Virus record (IMG/VR): IMGVR_UViG_3300024239_000011
Location: 62,001 to 126,000 of that record
DNA length: 64,000 bases
Reading direction: 5' to 3' (one strand)
Both the position numbers and the translations under genes were made by a program. Below the pieces are notes generated by a model. It worked only from the letters and a program-made list of their open reading frames with translations. It made no database searches and was not told the DNA's origin. Shown piece by piece: positions 13,953 to 39,135 of this stretch (position 1 is its first letter; each line of letters starts with the position of its first letter).

Positions 13953-14258
13953 TTAGACATCCGAGTTGTCAATCAACGATTGCTCGCATGTCGCGAAACG
14001 TAGCCGATCCATCAAATTGGAACAATAATCCCGCCCATAGGCAATCGTCACGCTTTCTTCAATGCGAGCCATAATAGTGCGGATATTCCAATTGAATGTA
14101 CGGGCGGTATTATAGAAATCCACCCAATCAACAATTAGATTGTTTTTACGAAAATGGTCGAGAAGTAGGTCCAAAGGTATTCCTTGGGATTCTACAAGCT
14201 TAAAAACTCCACTGATGACTCGACTACCATCAGAAGTAACACCCGAAACGGCGAGCAA
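13953..14258 (-). CDS. small protein resembling an AlaRS helical segment
   Basis: ISGVFKLVESQGIPLDL vs AlaRS-type AFKLYDTYGFPLDL. Confidence 0.4.
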   Translation of the reverse strand: MLAVSGVTSDGSRVISGVFKLVESQGIPLDLLLDHFRKNNLIVDWVDFYNTARTFNWNIRTIMARIEESVTIAYGRDYCSNLMDRLRFATCEQSLIDNSDV

Positions 14259-14290
14259 ACGCTTCCGAAGACGCTTATGCGCACCGTGTT

Positions 14291-14530
14291 TTATGCTTCC
14301 CGCGAGATCATTTCGTTATCCTCCACACTCATAAGTTGATTTACATAAAACTGAAATGGTAATTGAACATCTGAAACTGGAAACTGAACTATGTATGCAT
14401 ATTCATCACTATACTGATGGACGAGAACTTCCGCCCCATACTGCTCAAAAAGCCGGTCAATAACTGAGGGTGGTATTGGTTCATCCACCTCGATACGAAC
14501 CAACAAGTTGACACATTTCATGATACGCAA
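14291..14530 (-). CDS. hypothetical protein
   Basis: 79 aa ORF. Confidence 0.55.
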   Translation of the reverse strand: MRIMKCVNLLVRIEVDEPIPPSVIDRLFEQYGAEVLVHQYSDEYAYIVQFPVSDVQLPFQFYVNQLMSVEDNEMISREA

Positions 14531-23529: not shown

Positions 23530-25083
23530 TTACCAGTGTGCCAAGATCAGCGGCGTGTCTTGATAAGACTGCCAAATTCGTTCGGTGATATATGGCATCA
23601 TCGGATGTGCCAGACGTAGGCATTGATCGAGGCACCGCATAATCGTTCCCAATGCATCCATGTCGTTCTGATCGTACAAACGATCCTTGGACGCCTCGAT
23701 GTACCAATCGCAGAACTCGTGTTTGAAGAACAATCGGAACGCATCCGCCGCTGCTCGGTAATCAAATGCATCCAGGGCATTTGCCATAGTACGTTTTGTT
23801 TGATCGAGTGATGCGAGGATACGCAGATCATCAGGATGTTGAGACTCGTTCCAGGCAGATGGACGACCCATCCGGTCGAAATGACTGAGACAGAACCGCG
23901 AGGCTTGCCACAGTTTGTTTGCGAACCGTTTTGCAGAATCGAAAATATCGTTCGACAATCGGATATCCTGCCCGGCGGTACCGTTCTCCAAGAACCCGAA
24001 CCGCAAAGCGTCACATCCGAATTTTTCGATGATTAGCAGAGGATCAATGCCGTTTCCCTTCGACTTACACATTTTTTCCCCATTGGCGTCACGAATGATG
24101 CCGTGGAGATAGATGGTGTCAAATGCCATCTGATCGGTCAGGGCAAGCCCCATCATCAACATACGGGCACACCAGAAGAATAGGATGTCCGCTGCCGTCT
24201 CGATCATACTCGCCGGGTAGAAAGTTCGCAGATCGGGCGTGTCGTTTGGCCAGCCCAAAATGGCGAAGGGCCAAATTGCGGACGAGAACCATGTATCAAG
24301 GACATCGTGATCTTGTCGGATGTCATCCCCCAGAATAGCTCTGGCATCCGCCTCTGTACGTGCCGCGCAAAAAGCACCAGAACCGTTGTACCAAATCGGG
24401 ATACGGTGTCCCCACCAAATCTGACGCGAAATACACCACGGCTCGATGTTTTCGAGGAAATGACAGAAGGTTTTCCCTTCATATTCCGGGATAATCTTTA
24501 GTTCACCCGCATGATAACGTGCAAGAAGGTCGGTAGCCAGTTGACTAGTGTCCAACCACCACTGCCCATCCTGACGGTAAATCAATCCTTTTTCGAAACA
24601 CCGGTTGAACGCCTCTAGGGTGGCGGTGGGATGTTCGGGGCTAAGCGTATACCATTCGCGCGACCAATCACAGCTTGCGCCCAGACGGCGAATTTGCTGG
24701 GTGATGCGCCCACCCGTCGTTTTCTGCCATGCATCTGCTTTGGCAAAATACTGGTCACGGGTTGGTTCGGTAATCCCTTCGGCGGCAAGCTCAGCCTTAA
24801 TCTTAGCATCGGTTGCCAAACCCGCATGATCAGTACCGGGCTGCCATAGTGCATTAAAGCCCTGCATGCGCTTGTACCGGATCGTCGTATCCTGAAGGGT
24901 GGTGAAAAGTGCATGCCCCATGTGCAGTTGCCCAGTGATATTGGGCGGCGGCATTGGGATGTTGAAGGCTGGTGCCTCTGGGTTCATGCTTGGCTTAAAA
25001 AAGCCATTATTTTCCCAATGCGCGTAGATGTTCGGTTCTTCGGTTTTATAGTCGAAGTTCCGAGTTAGTTTGTTACGTCCCAC
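23530..25083 (-). CDS. valS: compact valyl-tRNA synthetase lacking CP1 editing domain and C-terminal coiled coil
   Basis: PPPNITGQLHMGHAL, PGTDHAG, WCISRQIWWGHRIP, DVLDTWFSS, DILFFW, KMCKSKGN; only 517 aa; start uncertain. Confidence 0.92.
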   Translation of the reverse strand: MGRNKLTRNFDYKTEEPNIYAHWENNGFFKPSMNPEAPAFNIPMPPPNITGQLHMGHALFTTLQDTTIRYKRMQGFNALWQPGTDHAGLATDAKIKAELAAEGITEPTRDQYFAKADAWQKTTGGRITQQIRRLGASCDWSREWYTLSPEHPTATLEAFNRCFEKGLIYRQDGQWWLDTSQLATDLLARYHAGELKIIPEYEGKTFCHFLENIEPWCISRQIWWGHRIPIWYNGSGAFCAARTEADARAILGDDIRQDHDVLDTWFSSAIWPFAILGWPNDTPDLRTFYPASMIETAADILFFWCARMLMMGLALTDQMAFDTIYLHGIIRDANGEKMCKSKGNGIDPLLIIEKFGCDALRFGFLENGTAGQDIRLSNDIFDSAKRFANKLWQASRFCLSHFDRMGRPSAWNESQHPDDLRILASLDQTKRTMANALDAFDYRAAADAFRLFFKHEFCDWYIEASKDRLYDQNDMDALGTIMRCLDQCLRLAHPMMPYITERIWQSYQDTPLILAHW

Positions 25084-25162
25084 ATGGTCATTTCGTTATC
25101 CTCCATAGTTTGAGTGACCAACCAAAACGATAAACAAATATTTTGGCTATGGCTATTTATTT

Positions 25163-25510
25163 TTGTTAGAATCCGGGGGAAAGCGAGGAATCATGCTTAA
25201 CTTTTTTTTGCGTGTGAATAACCCCTTTAAAAAGGATACCCATTCAAATTTCCACCATCTATGGGGCTGGCACAAATCATTGACCCAATATAGGGAATTC
25301 GAAATCGAAACATATTATAGTCCGATGATCGTTGATGTTGAAATTGTGTTTGAAATGAAGGGACGTGATCACGCTGGTCCCCGAATCACCATTGGTATAC
25401 TTGGATGGACAATTAGCGCATCAATCTATGATAATCGCCATTGGGATTATGATGCCGGATATTGGGAACAGGATGTGGTAGGGGATGACGGTACTGCCCC
25501 GCCTTCGTGA
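25163..25510 (+). CDS. hypothetical protein
   Basis: 115 aa ORF. Confidence 0.6.
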   Translation: MLESGGKRGIMLNFFLRVNNPFKKDTHSNFHHLWGWHKSLTQYREFEIETYYSPMIVDVEIVFEMKGRDHAGPRITIGILGWTISASIYDNRHWDYDAGYWEQDVVGDDGTAPPS

Positions 25511-25540: not shown

Positions 25541-25972
25541 CTAATCCCCAACAAAATTCACAACGTCGCTGATAAGGGTGTGTTGGTCAACACGCCCACC
25601 CGCCCTAAATTCATCATAGGTTAGCCACACCACTTCTTTGGTTTCCTTGGTGGGCTTACCCAGACCCTTAGGTTTCTTGATCTCAGCCACAAAGATGTAT
25701 AGGTCGAAATATTCGTCTCGCCCTTCTACCCGATCTTTCTTGGCAAAGCACAAGTTGCGAACGTTGTCTGCCTTAATCCCAAGTTCTTCAGAACCTTCCC
25801 GGATTGCAGCAGCTTCAATGGTTTCACCAAGGTCTTGTTTGCCTTTGGCAATTTGGGGCAATACTCCACCAAAACCCGCTTTTGACGGTACCATAAACAA
25901 CATACGCAAAATACCATTATCAATGTAATAGGGTACTAACCCAGCACGATTTGTCGTTGAAAGTCCCTTCAA
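25541..25972 (-). CDS. Nudix hydrolase
   Basis: KGKQDLGETIEAAAIREGSEELG; GGAGG plus TTG start; CTAAATA late core. Confidence 0.85.
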   Translation of the reverse strand: MKGLSTTNRAGLVPYYIDNGILRMLFMVPSKAGFGGVLPQIAKGKQDLGETIEAAAIREGSEELGIKADNVRNLCFAKKDRVEGRDEYFDLYIFVAEIKKPKGLGKPTKETKEVVWLTYDEFRAGGRVDQHTLISDVVNFVGD

Positions 25973-26066
25973 TTGGTACCTCCCGCCGTTCTTTATATTT
26001 AGACTTAAACGTCCAATGGCAAGCAAATAATACCACCAATTTGCGGTATATTTGCTTGCCATGGCA

Positions 26067-26672
26067 TCATTTCCACTGGGTGCGGCGCTGCTGCTTCCAA
26101 TTCTTCTGCGGGCGCCGCCAGTAATCATCCCAGACAGTCGGCAGGCACGCCTTGCGACGACGACCACGAGCCTTGATTCGATATTCGACCGCATCTTCAT
26201 CGTAGTTCAGGAAATCGTTCTCACGAATCTCCTGGGTCGTTGCCATGTGACGAAGCGACTGGCACTTCCAGTGACGGCGGCAACGGATGCCCTTGACCGG
26301 ACCATTCCGGAAATCCGTCTCCGGATCGTAGTTAAAACGGGACCACTGCGTGCGGTTCGGGCACCCAAGCTGGAAAAACCGTTCCACAATGGTTTCCGGC
26401 GCAATCACCAGCCCCAATTCATCCAGAAGGACAAACTGCCCGCGCGTCCACGACGCCGGTTCCAGGGAGCTACGAATGTACGCCATCCGCGCAACACGGA
26501 CGATCTCACGATGAAACGTGGGTTCGTCCATCAAGGAAGTCTTAACCACCCCATTGTAGGCAATATAAATGAATGGACGACTTGCCCGAGATTTCAGGAA
26601 AGCATCCAAACTTTCATAGACCCACGTTTCCTTGCTGTGGATGTCCTTGAGAGTGACTTCATACTTGTACAT
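26067..26672 (-). CDS. hypothetical protein, paralog of 26887..27471
   Basis: shared C-terminal GPV.G...TTQE.RENDFLNYDEDA.EY.I.ARG...LP..WDD...KNWK.QR.T.W. Confidence 0.8.
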   Translation of the reverse strand: MYKYEVTLKDIHSKETWVYESLDAFLKSRASRPFIYIAYNGVVKTSLMDEPTFHREIVRVARMAYIRSSLEPASWTRGQFVLLDELGLVIAPETIVERFFQLGCPNRTQWSRFNYDPETDFRNGPVKGIRCRRHWKCQSLRHMATTQEIRENDFLNYDEDAVEYRIKARGRRRKACLPTVWDDYWRRPQKNWKQQRRTQWK

Positions 26673-34421: not shown

Positions 34422-34505
34422 TGGCGATCCTGAGAGGATTCGAACCCCCCTTTTCAGCATCCGACTACGGTTAAGCGGGTAGAAGCCGCCCCCGGCTACA
34501 GGATC
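34422..34505 (-). tRNA. rearranged tRNA-Arg(UCU)-like gene
   Basis: perfect acceptor and T arms; anticodon arm 8 nt after acceptor; GGAT-GC-TGAAAA after it. Confidence 0.7.
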
Positions 34506-34944: not shown

Positions 34945-35018
34945 TGGTACCCAGTACGTGAATCGAACACGTTCGCATGCTATGTGAAAGCAAGCAGGCT
35001 TCCAAGCCGTCACCGGGT
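34945..35018 (-). tRNA. tRNA-Val(CAC), divergent
   Basis: loop TT-CAC-AT, intact acceptor and T arms. Confidence 0.75.
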
Positions 35019-35019
35019 A

Positions 35020-35094
35020 TGGTGCCGAATGTGGGGATTGAACCCACCACAACTGCTGTGTAAGAGCGGTCGTCACCCCAGTGATCTATTCGGC
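35020..35094 (-). tRNA. tRNA-Val(UAC)
   Basis: loop CT-TAC-AC. Confidence 0.8.
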
Positions 35095-38802: not shown

Positions 38803-38877
38803 TGGTGGGTCTGGGTGGGATCGAACCACCTCTCTTCGGCGTGTCATACCGACGCTTTCCCAATAAGCTACAGACCC
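38803..38877 (-). tRNA. tRNA-Val(GAC)
   Basis: canonical. Confidence 0.9.
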
Positions 38878-38887
38878 AATGAAGAAA

Positions 38888-38971
38888 TGGAGAACCGTGG
38901 AGGAATCGAACCTCTTAGCCACCGGGTAAGAGCCGGTTGCGGACCCCAGTCATCGTCTTGGCGCACGGTTC
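38888..38971 (-). tRNA. tRNA-Lys(CUU) with insert before the D arm, U73
   Basis: ACCGG-CT-CTT-AC-CCGGT. Confidence 0.78.
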
Positions 38972-38978
38972 ATTGATT

Positions 38979-39053
38979 TGGTGGAGCGTATCGGAATCTC
39001 ACCGATCAGGCTAGAATCTTGCAAGGATTCTCCGGGTACATAGCCCACGCCCC
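38979..39053 (-). tRNA. non-canonical tRNA-Ala(UGC)
   Basis: G3-U70, no D-loop GG, T loop TGAGATT. Confidence 0.78.
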
Positions 39054-39059
39054 ATGTGG

Positions 39060-39135
39060 TGGTAGGTCTTCCGCGAATCGAACGCGGTCAATAACACCAT
39101 GTCACGGTGTTGCCTTCCCATCTGGCTCAAGACCT
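39060..39135 (-). tRNA. tRNA-Val(GAC)
   Basis: loop GT-GAC-AT. Confidence 0.87.

What the first reader, a model, noticed from the sequence alone, without database searches (positions are those of the whole stretch)
23530..25083. ValRS without an editing domain
Seen: GLIYR is followed almost at once by QWWLD, so the CP1 editing insertion is missing, and the protein ends after the anticodon helical bundle. Known: ValRS needs CP1 to clear Thr-tRNA-Val. The strong GGAGG RBS precedes an out-of-frame ATG (MTMWDVTN) rather than the GTG start. Inference: an error-prone or specificity-shifted synthetase paired with four divergent phage tRNA-Val genes.
Basis: partly seen in the sequence, partly recalled or inferred. 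Interest (0 to 1): 0.6.

Follow-up and report, generated by a model that had tools for sequence, protein, structure and literature searches.

The report
Valine-free mini ValRS behind a frameshift
A 543-kb phage carries a stripped-down valine-charging enzyme with no proofreading domain and almost no valine of its own, and the gene seems to be reachable only when a ribosome slips back one base at a valine codon, so it may be made exactly when charged valine tRNA runs out.

Summary
Window 23530-25083 (-) encodes a 517-aa ValRS core that lacks the CP1 editing domain, both zinc knuckles and the C-terminal junction/coiled-coil. The HIGH and KMSKS motifs and the valine pocket are kept. It belongs to one phage-restricted clade (48 proteins found, mostly on 200-650 kb contigs).

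Two further facts change the picture:
- The family is nearly valine-free: median 2 Val per protein, 0.66% against 5.6% in the same columns of full-length ValRS. It is the lowest of 192 long frames in this genome.
An SD-served ATG opens a 6-8 codon ORF, and the ValRS frame is its -1 frame. In 14 of 21 loci the "GTG" is GTT, and 11 have no in-frame start near the N-terminus. The ATG frame always reads N|NAN (G|GAC, G|GAA, A|AAC, C|CAA) followed by a Val codon. That codon is GTA in 18 of 21 loci, and GTA is never used in the gene bodies.

Best reading: a one-tRNA "hungry-codon" -1 frameshift makes an emergency, non-proofreading ValRS when Val-tRNA is scarce. This rests on comparative evidence only. 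Nothing is shown biochemically.

The parts
23530..25083 (-). Main ORF: minimal ValRS, consisting of the Rossmann catalytic core plus the anticodon-binding helical bundle. As an ORF it is 517 codons from the GTG.
   Evidence: AF2 model pLDDT 92.4, pTM 0.92. Foldseek top hit 1GAX_A, TMq 0.92.
25100..25104 (-). Shine-Dalgarno GGAGG. It lies 8 nt upstream of the ATG at 25091 and 16 nt upstream of the GTG at 25083.
25065..25091 (-). Leader ORF: ATG ACC ATG TGG GAC GTA ACA AAC TAA (MTMWDVTN*). The ValRS frame is its -1 frame.
   Evidence: Conserved in 21 of 21 family loci. In 110 unrelated viral contigs with the same RBS-ATG cassette, none shows this layout.
25074..25080 (-). Proposed slip site G|GAC GTA. 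P-site tRNA-Asp on GAC (25079-25077) re-pairs with GGA (25080-25078) while the A-site Val codon GTA (25076-25074) waits. Reading then resumes at CGT (25077-25075).
   Evidence: N|NAN followed by a Val codon in 21 of 21 loci. GGA and xGT are fixed against each gene's own codon usage. Precedent in PMC6771820.
25032..25063 (-). Two-tier hairpin (TCGG..CTTCG / CGAAG..CCGA) beginning 10 nt after the Val codon. It may stimulate the slip but is not universal.
   Evidence: window: -12.0 kcal/mol, z = -2.2; 74% of cells paired against 67% in shuffles, with 5 pairs changed on both sides. RNAalifold finds no consensus over all loci.
24913..24924 (-). HIGH motif, here HMGH (residues 54-57).
24565..24576 (-). 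Junction where CP1 (about 185 residues, including both Cys pairs of the zinc knuckle) is missing. The sequence ...GLIYRQD|GQWWLD... is modelled as a beta-hairpin (E168-171 / E174-177, pLDDT about 96).
24301..24303 (-). The only valine codon inside the gene: GTC, V261 in DHDVLDTWFSS.
24061..24075 (-). KMSKS motif, here KMCKS (residues 337-341).
23536..23823 (-). Anticodon-binding helical bundle (PF08264). The protein ends here, with no junction or coiled-coil domain.
34945..35094 (-). tRNA-Val(CAC) and tRNA-Val(UAC). UAC reads the GUA sensor codon.
38803..39135 (-). Two tRNA-Val(GAC) genes (38803-38877 and 39060-39135), with a tRNA-Ala between them.

Best explanation
The gene encodes a working but minimal valyl-tRNA synthetase of a 543-kb phage. 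It has the catalytic Rossmann core and the anticodon-binding bundle only. An ancestor of a phage-restricted clade lost the CP1 editing domain, the zinc knuckles and the C-terminal tRNA-elbow-binding domains. The enzyme should therefore charge tRNA-Val, from phage or host, without clearing Thr-tRNA-Val.

It appears built as an emergency enzyme in two ways.
- The protein is almost valine-free, so it can be completed when Val-tRNA-Val is unavailable.
- Translation starts at the SD-served ATG at 25091 in another frame. It reaches the ValRS frame only if the peptidyl-tRNA-Asp on GAC slips back one base onto GGA while the next codon, a valine codon (GUA), waits for its tRNA. This is one-tRNA 'hungry-codon' -1 frameshifting.

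The predicted behaviour follows. When Val-tRNA-Val is plentiful, ribosomes read GUA and stop three codons later, giving an 8-residue peptide. When it is scarce, they shift frame and make ValRS with the N-terminus M-T-M-W-D|R-N-K-L-T. This forms a negative feedback loop.

Shown: the architecture, the conservation, the valine avoidance, and the conserved leader geometry with no in-frame start. Inferred: enzymatic activity, the lack of proofreading in vivo, the frameshift itself, and its dependence on Val-tRNA.
For: **Architecture and identity**
- 86 positions are at least 95% conserved across short and full-length ValRS, including HIGH, KMSKS and the Val pocket.
- AF2 pLDDT 92; 1GAX TMq 0.92; the naturally CP1-less M. 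mobile LeuRS 3ziu also matches.
- the 48 short forms sit on one side of one branch, SH-aLRT 100.
- the 80 best hits in 185,579 species genomes are all full-length, at no more than 45% identity.
- the short forms lie on phage contigs, including the cultured Stenotrophomonas phage RAS14.

**Valine avoidance**
- Val is 0.66% against 5.61% in homologous columns (ratio 0.12). All other residues fall between 0.76 and 1.35.
- the ValRS frame has the lowest Val content of 192 long frames in this genome, 0.38% against a median of 6.87%.
- 65 Val codons in 21 ORFs, and none is GTA.

**Leader**
- all 21 loci have an SD plus an ATG with the ValRS frame at -1.
- 14 of 21 have GTT instead of GTG, and 11 of 21 have no ATG/GTG/TTG near the N-terminus.
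- 28 of 48 database proteins were called from an internal Met inside or just before the HIGH motif.
- All 21 loci have N0 equal to the first base of the P-site codon, in three variants (G, A, C), and all 21 have a Val codon next.
- GGA and xGT are kept even where they make up 2-5% of synonymous usage.
- the same RBS-ATG cassette elsewhere gives 0 of 110 with a long -1 ORF.
- the sequence is identical in three other samples.

**Mechanistic precedent**
- (PMC6771820): P-site tRNA-Glu on GAA in GGG-GAA-AGA slips -1 when the A-site codon is slow, and one-tRNA slippage needs no downstream structure.
- other aaRS genes of these phages have ordinary starts, but several also avoid their own amino acid (MetRS 1 Met in 507, TyrRS 3 Tyr in 487).
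Against: - There is no protein, ribosome-profiling or reporter evidence. The frameshift is inferred only from comparative sequence.
- The slip sites are not classical X XXY YYZ heptamers. Re-pairing is imperfect: GAC to GGA has one wobble and one mismatch, and CAA to CCA has a middle mismatch.
- No downstream structure is conserved across the whole family.
- 7 of 21 loci, including the window, do have GTG at the ORF start. Three GTT loci have an in-frame ATG just downstream, and in two of these it overlaps the leader's stop (GTATGA). Ordinary initiation or termination-reinitiation can therefore serve some members.
- Two other genes with a similar leader (window 14311 and G005 518176) carry GCA (Ala) at the equivalent position and have no demonstrable link to alanine. 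The cassette may not be amino-acid specific.
- The probabilities assume the loci are independent.
Confidence: 0.55

Rival explanations
1. Ordinary initiation at the annotated GTG (25083). The little ATG-ORF is an incidental or merely modulatory upstream ORF that competes with or couples to initiation, and there is no frameshift. Members with GTT would use some unrecognised non-canonical start.
For: - GTG is present in 7 of 21 loci, including the window.
- In the six loci with the ATG at p-2, the SD lies 10-11 nt from the GTG, a usable spacing.
- RAS14 and L108 have an in-frame ATG overlapping the leader's stop, the classical coupling arrangement.
Against: - 14 of 21 loci have GTT, and 11 of 21 have no canonical in-frame start before the HIGH motif. 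The upstream 40-55 codons are nevertheless conserved coding sequence and include Rossmann strand beta-1.
- In the window the SD is 16 nt from the GTG but 8 nt from the ATG.
- GGA and xGT are held at synonymous sites against codon usage.
- A ribosome stalled at the leader's Val codon would cover the GTG. That gives regulation of the wrong sign for a valine-free enzyme (my inference).
Confidence: 0.22
2. The protein is a ValRS-derived paralogue with another job. It may charge another amino acid, act on a non-tRNA acceptor, or bind tRNA as a decoy. In that case the lack of editing is irrelevant.
For: - It scores below every NCBIfam valS equivalog cutoff (615 against 704; 571 against 612).
- It lacks three domains of canonical ValRS.
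- Several family-specific substitutions lie near conserved motifs.
Against: - Low scores are expected from the missing domains alone.
- HIGH, KMSKS, all six Val-pocket residues and the anticodon-binding domain are conserved.
- Most family-specific changes are V to I/L/C/A replacements, that is, valine avoidance.
- Valine avoidance plus a Val codon in the leader ties the gene to valine.
- The naturally CP1-less LeuRS of M. mobile is an active synthetase (3ziu; PMC3643597).
Confidence: 0.07
3. The gene is a decaying remnant: a pseudogene with a 5' frameshift and internal deletions.
For: The start is out of frame with the best RBS, and large parts of ValRS are missing.
Against: - The same architecture, the same deletion boundaries and the same leader occur in 21 loci at only about 50% protein identity, with intact ORFs of about 450-520 codons.
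- The two variants between samples fall on third codon positions.
- The fold is confident.
Confidence: 0.02

Closest known systems
Canonical bacterial ValRS (T. thermophilus, PDB 1GAX/1IVS)
   Same: Class Ia Rossmann core, HIGH and KMSKS motifs, Val pocket (P41, P42, D81, W456, I491, W495) and anticodon-binding helical bundle. Foldseek TMq 0.92. About 45% identity over the shared parts.
   Different: No CP1 editing domain, no zinc knuckles, and no junction or coiled-coil C-terminal domains (517 against about 860-880 aa). 0.4% Val against about 5.6%. Encoded by a phage.
Naturally CP1-less LeuRS of Mycoplasma mobile (PDB 3ziu; PMC3643597)
   Same: A class Ia synthetase that lost its CP1 editing domain in nature and still aminoacylates. 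It is a structural match to the model.
   Different: That enzyme is LeuRS, cellular, and the organism's only LeuRS. It keeps its C-terminal domain. No cognate-residue avoidance or recoded start is described for it.
prfB (RF2) autoregulatory +1 frameshift
   Same: The product's own activity decides whether ribosomes stay in frame and terminate early, or shift frame and make the product. An SD lies close upstream, and a short 0-frame ORF ends just after the site (established knowledge; review PMC5009743).
   Different: Here the shift is -1, not +1. The sensor is a sense (Val) codon, not a stop codon. The site lies only 3-5 codons after initiation. It is untested.
'Hungry-codon' one-tRNA -1 frameshifting (dnaX under starvation, HIV-1 FFR route, GGG-GAA-AGA suppressor context; PMC6771820)
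   Same: P-site tRNA slippage while the A site is vacant, with no structure needed, and the same G|GAA context.
   Different: The known cases are laboratory, starvation or viral side routes. The 2016 review (PMC5009743) states that no natural use for making a trans-frame protein under starvation was known.
Leader-peptide attenuation and low 'cognate bias' of biosynthetic enzymes (PMC4209129)
   Same: A short leader ORF carries the cognate codon as a sensor of charged tRNA. The enzyme is depleted of the very amino acid it supplies, as with Trp-free TrpA.
   Different: The output would be a frame change rather than transcription termination. There is a single sensor codon. The depletion is extreme and occurs in a tRNA synthetase of a phage.

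Membership tests
Valyl-tRNA synthetase (class Ia) | Rossmann catalytic core with HIGH and KMSKS motifs | tested here: met
   HMGH (54-57) and KMCKS (337-341). PF00133 E = 6e-107.
Valyl-tRNA synthetase (class Ia) | Valine-binding pocket residues (Tth P41, P42, D81, W456, I491, W495) | tested here: met
   P45/P46, D85, W265, I300 and W304 are aligned and conserved. The residue list comes from my knowledge of Fukai et al. 2000.
Valyl-tRNA synthetase (class Ia) | Groups with ValRS rather than IleRS, LeuRS or MetRS | tested here: met
   The best NCBIfam, PDB and fold hits are all ValRS, far ahead of IleRS.
Valyl-tRNA synthetase (class Ia) | CP1 post-transfer editing domain | tested here: not met
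   About 185 residues are absent and there is no PF13603 match.
Valyl-tRNA synthetase (class Ia) | C-terminal junction and coiled-coil domain (PF10458) | tested here: not met
   The protein ends at the anticodon bundle.
Valyl-tRNA synthetase (class Ia) | Score above the curated equivalog cutoff | tested here: not met
   615 against 704 (NF004349); 571 against 612 (TIGR00422).
Valyl-tRNA synthetase (class Ia) | Val-tRNA-Val synthesis | not testable with these tools
   Needs an aminoacylation assay.
Programmed -1 ribosomal frameshift gene | Product frame lacks its own start and is entered from an upstream 0-frame ORF, conserved among homologues | tested here: met
   All 21 loci have the geometry, and 11 of 21 have no in-frame start. 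In a control set, 0 of 110 do.
Programmed -1 ribosomal frameshift gene | Slippery site that allows re-pairing in the -1 frame | tested here: inconclusive
   N|NAN (G|GAC, G|GAA, A|AAC, C|CAA) allows 2 of 3 re-pairing for one tRNA. It is not a classical X XXY YYZ heptamer.
Programmed -1 ribosomal frameshift gene | Downstream stimulatory structure | tested here: inconclusive
   A hairpin is present in a subset, with no family-wide consensus. It is not required for one-tRNA slippage.
Programmed -1 ribosomal frameshift gene | Trans-frame protein product observed | not testable with these tools
   No proteomic or ribosome-profiling data. No RNA run holds the locus.
T-box or other known cis-regulatory RNA of aaRS genes | Match to a curated RNA family in the leader | tested here: not met
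   Rfam scan of 24900-25450 gave only a chance miRNA hit at E = 0.89.

The most novel reading that the evidence does not exclude
This is the first natural example of 'hungry-codon' frameshifting used as a sensor. A phage tRNA synthetase gene would be translated only when its own product, Val-tRNA-Val (specifically the GUA reader), is lacking, and it encodes an enzyme purged of valine so that it can be finished under that condition. By extension, huge phages would carry a set of cognate-free 'emergency' synthetases (Met-free MetRS, Tyr-poor TyrRS, mini-LeuRS). These would keep translation going after host charging is shut down or attacked, at the price of proofreading.
Probability: 0.4. Interest if true: 0.9.

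Novelty: new variant of a known kind. Interest (0 to 1): 0.85.

Why it matters
- It would explain what phage-encoded synthetases are for. Huge phages carry up to 15 of them (PMC7162821) and their role is still guessed at. On this reading they are rescue enzymes, built to be made and to work when a particular charged tRNA is missing.
- It would give a natural, compact (about 30 nt) sensor of aminoacyl-tRNA that acts by frameshifting. The 2016 recoding review said no such case was known.
- It provides a natural ValRS without CP1 or C-terminal domains. That sets a lower bound on what a ValRS needs, and lets one measure how much Thr-for-Val error a virus tolerates.
- It exposes a systematic annotation error. 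More than half of the family is called from an internal Met inside or just before the HIGH motif.

Tried and rejected
- **One-base assembly error.** I considered a GGG/GGGG error that would put the ATG in frame. It is rejected: 21 independent loci share the offset, and contigs from three other samples are identical there.
- **Trans editing domain.** I looked for PF13603, ValRS CP1 as a protein query, and YbaK PF04073. Only the phage's own IleRS matched.
- **Known RNA element in the leader.** None was found.
- **Family-wide downstream structure.** RNAalifold gave none. A named hairpin is only modestly supported.
- **Second leader-bearing ORF.** I tested whether the ORF at window 13953-14315, which has GCA at the equivalent site, is AlaRS-derived. 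There is only a sub-threshold match to AlaRS 377-424 (Pfam E = 0.03; PDB E = 0.8). It has no homologues and is not Ala-poor, so the idea is left open.
- **Metagenome and species-genome scans.** They returned almost only full-length ValRS because of the ranking. This is useful as a negative for cells but added only one short locus (L028).
- **DNA not obtainable.** No DNA could be fetched for P0005, P0025 or P0068.
- **Literature.** Searches found no description of a CP1-less ValRS, a valine-free synthetase or a frameshifted aaRS gene. The library is incomplete, so this is not proof of novelty.
- **Initiator-like tRNA-Val.** I considered one that might start at GUG/GUU. It is rejected: all four are ordinary elongator cloverleaves.
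Full report
**1. The observation**

Window 23530-25083 (minus strand) is an intact 517-codon ORF. Pfam finds tRNA-synt_1 and Anticodon_1. NCBIfam ranks the valS equivalogs first, but below their cutoffs (615 against 704 bits).

Against solved structures the protein matches T. thermophilus ValRS (1GAX) in two pieces: residues 6-172 to 3-170, and ~173-508 to ~350-695. An alignment with full-length ValRS shows a clean gap of about 185 residues between GLIYR(x)D and (G)QWW. The gap removes CP1 and both Cys pairs of the zinc knuckle. The protein ends at ...LILAHW, where full-length enzymes continue for another 165-185 residues.

**2. A functional-looking enzyme from a phage-restricted clade**

- The window is part of a 543,035-bp virus record that CheckV rates as complete.
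- A protein search found 48 relatives of 430-535 aa with the same architecture, at 45-64% identity. Many lie on contigs of 200-650 kb. Nine are in IMG/VR. One is in the cultured Stenotrophomonas phages RAS14 and CM1.
- All share the same deletion boundaries and the same C-terminus.
- On a tree with 70 full-length ValRS they sit on one side of a single branch (SH-aLRT 100). This tree is unrooted and covers only the sampled sequences.
- The 80 best hits among 185,579 species genomes are all full-length and at most 45% identical.
- 86 positions are at least 95% conserved across short and long forms. They include HIGH (HMGH), KMSKS (KMCKS) and the six residues of the Val pocket.
- The AlphaFold model is confident (pLDDT 92.4, pTM 0.92). 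CP1 is replaced by a tight beta-hairpin. The model superposes on 1GAX with TMq 0.92 and also matches the naturally CP1-less M. mobile LeuRS.

**3. No editing in trans from the phage**

The only CP1-like sequence in the genome lies inside a full-length IleRS (934 aa, above the TIGR00392 cutoff). No YbaK-type domain is present. Whether host ValRS edits in trans cannot be told from sequence.

The four tRNA-Val genes (CAC, UAC, GAC, GAC) are 42-55% identical to each other. All carry A35, C36, A73 and an encoded CCA. They are ordinary substrates for a ValRS.

**4. The protein is almost valine-free**

- The window protein has a single Val (V261, GTC).
- The 48 family members have a median of 2 Val, and five have none.
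- In the columns shared with full-length ValRS, Val is 0.66% against 5.61% (ratio 0.12). Every other residue lies between 0.76 and 1.35.
- Val is replaced mainly by I, L, A and C. This explains the family signatures PPNITG and FFWCARM.
- This is not a genome-wide trait. Of 192 open frames of at least 300 codons, the median Val content is 6.87%. The ValRS frame is the lowest at 0.38%, and the next lowest is 2.68%.
- This is the 'low cognate bias' described for amino-acid biosynthetic enzymes (PMC4209129), taken to an extreme.
- It also seems to hold for other synthetases of these phages: this genome's MetRS has 1 Met in 507 residues, a relative's TyrRS has 3 Tyr in 487, and the IleRS is Ile-poor. 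A LysRS is not depleted.

**5. The start region is conserved and does not fit ordinary initiation**

I aligned 21 loci on the first base (p) of the codon that is GTG in the window.

- In all 21, an SD-served ATG lies at p-8 (15 loci) or p-2 (6 loci). The ValRS frame is therefore the -1 frame of that ATG.
- The ATG-ORF is 5-8 codons long.
- The codon at p is GTG in 7 loci and GTT in 14.
- Three GTT loci have an in-frame ATG shortly downstream. The other 11 have no ATG, GTG or TTG before the Met of 'MPPPN' or of HMGH.
- Consistent with this, 28 of 48 database proteins were called from a Met at position 42-55. A protein starting there would lack Rossmann strand beta-1 or part of the HIGH motif.
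- The 40-55 upstream codons are clearly conserved coding sequence.
- In the ATG frame every locus reads N|NAN followed by a Val codon: G|GAC (14), G|GAA (4), A|AAC (2), C|CAA (1). The Val codon is GTA (18) or GTC (3).
- The base before the NAN codon always equals that codon's first base, in three different versions. That is what a -1 re-pairing of the P-site tRNA requires.
- In the ValRS frame these bases are GGA/AAA/CCA followed by CGT/AGT. GGA and xGT are kept even in GC-rich loci where they make up 2-5% of synonymous usage. The nominal probabilities are about 1e-15 each, assuming independent loci, which overstates the case.
- GTA is never used among the 65 Val codons in the 21 gene bodies, although it accounts for 17% of Val codons in this genome.
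- As a control, 110 other viral contigs with the same GGAGGATAANNAAATGA cassette include 100 ordinary ORFs and none with a long -1 ORF.
- The other synthetase genes of these phages have normal in-frame starts.
- Contigs from three further samples are identical across the leader. The two variants inside the gene fall on third codon positions.

**6. Mechanism proposed**

The simplest reading that fits all 21 loci has four steps.
1. Translation initiates at the SD-served ATG.
2. Three to five codons are translated.
3. The ribosome pauses with the NAN codon in the P site and the Val codon in the A site.
4. The single P-site tRNA slips -1, and reading resumes at CGU or AGU in the ValRS frame.

This is the 'hungry' one-tRNA route. 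It is slow, is switched on by lack of the A-site aminoacyl-tRNA, and needs no downstream structure. The context GGG-GAA-AGA is a documented case of tRNA-Glu slipping from GAA when the next codon is slow (PMC6771820).

The result would be a feedback loop. Scarce Val-tRNA-Val leads to a shift, which makes ValRS, and the nearly Val-free ORF can be completed in that state. A hairpin starts 10 nt after the Val codon in the window and in many relatives, but it is not universal.

The 2016 recoding review states that no natural use of hungry-codon frameshifting to make a trans-frame protein was known (PMC5009743). My searches found nothing later, though the library is incomplete.

**7. Cautions**

- Nothing here shows the frameshift, the enzyme activity or the error rate directly.
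- Seven loci, the window among them, have GTG. Two have an ATG overlapping the leader's stop. Ordinary initiation or coupling may therefore contribute in some members.
- Two other genes with a near-identical leader carry GCA at the equivalent position and have no demonstrable tie to alanine: window 14311, which precedes an orphan ORF with a sub-threshold likeness to AlaRS 377-424, and a 107-codon ORF in a 578-kb relative. The cassette may be a more general device.
- The host is unknown. The phage is found in subsurface and soil metagenomes of one study.

**8. Verdict**

- The finding is real.
- 'Error-prone' is plausible but untested.
- 'Specificity-shifted' is not supported.
- The more important features are the valine-free composition, which is shown, and the conserved frameshift-type leader with a valine codon at the critical position. 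The geometry of that leader is shown, and the mechanism is inferred.

Noticed in passing
G000 genome 397405-398928 (L005:643-2166, -); L108:245-1708; L002:1384-4188: Other synthetases of these phages also avoid their own amino acid. This genome's MetRS has 1 Met in 507 aa (the initiator only), a relative's TyrRS has 3 Tyr in 487, and the full-length IleRS has 3.96% Ile against a 6.19% median. A class I LysRS is not depleted.
   Followed up: partly
window 13953-14324 (-): A second copy of the same leader: GGAGGATAACGAA ATG ATC TCG CGG GAA GCA TAA, with the ATG at 14311. A 120-codon ORF follows in the -1 frame with no in-frame start before a TTG at codon 21. The site reads G|GAA followed by GCA (Ala). 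The ORF has a sub-threshold match to AlaRS residues 377-424, has no homologues, and is not Ala-poor.
   Followed up: partly
L119 (G005, 578-kb relative, 518176-518191 +): The same leader with ATG ACC CCG CTA AAC GCA GGA AAG TAA and a 107-codon ORF in the -1 frame. The site reads A|AAC followed by GCA. An in-frame ATG exists 16 codons in.
   Followed up: partly
L007:12025-13302: A 425-aa LeuRS-like protein in a related 204-kb phage contig. It scores 408 bits on TIGR00396, below the 548 cutoff, matched in three stretches. This is apparently another class Ia synthetase without its editing insertion and C-terminal domain.
   Followed up: partly
window 34422-34505 (-): A tRNA with an 8-nt anticodon loop and a long variable arm. 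ARAGORN reports 'Lys|Stop (ctta)'. It could be a quadruplet or ochre-reading tRNA. Stop-codon usage in long ORFs shows no sign of recoding: TAA 169, TGA 136, TAG 57.
   Followed up: partly
window 25541-26200 (-); L108, L110, L112, L201: A NUDIX hydrolase gene sits just upstream of the ValRS. In relatives the ValRS neighbours include NUDIX, an HD_4 (RelA/SpoT-type HD) protein, an ADP-ribosylglycohydrolase, PTH2 and GreA. The neighbourhood hints at translation stress and alarmone handling.
   Followed up: no
L028 (contig 1,859,102 bp) and L114 (contig 1,273,734 bp): Short ValRS genes with the same leader lie on metagenome contigs far larger than any described phage. Whether these are cells with prophages, chimeric assemblies or something else was not examined.
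   Followed up: no
window 15583-61585: The window holds 37 tRNA genes, all on the minus strand, many in duplicate or triplicate (Phe x3, Ile x4, Ala x4, Gly x4).
   Followed up: no
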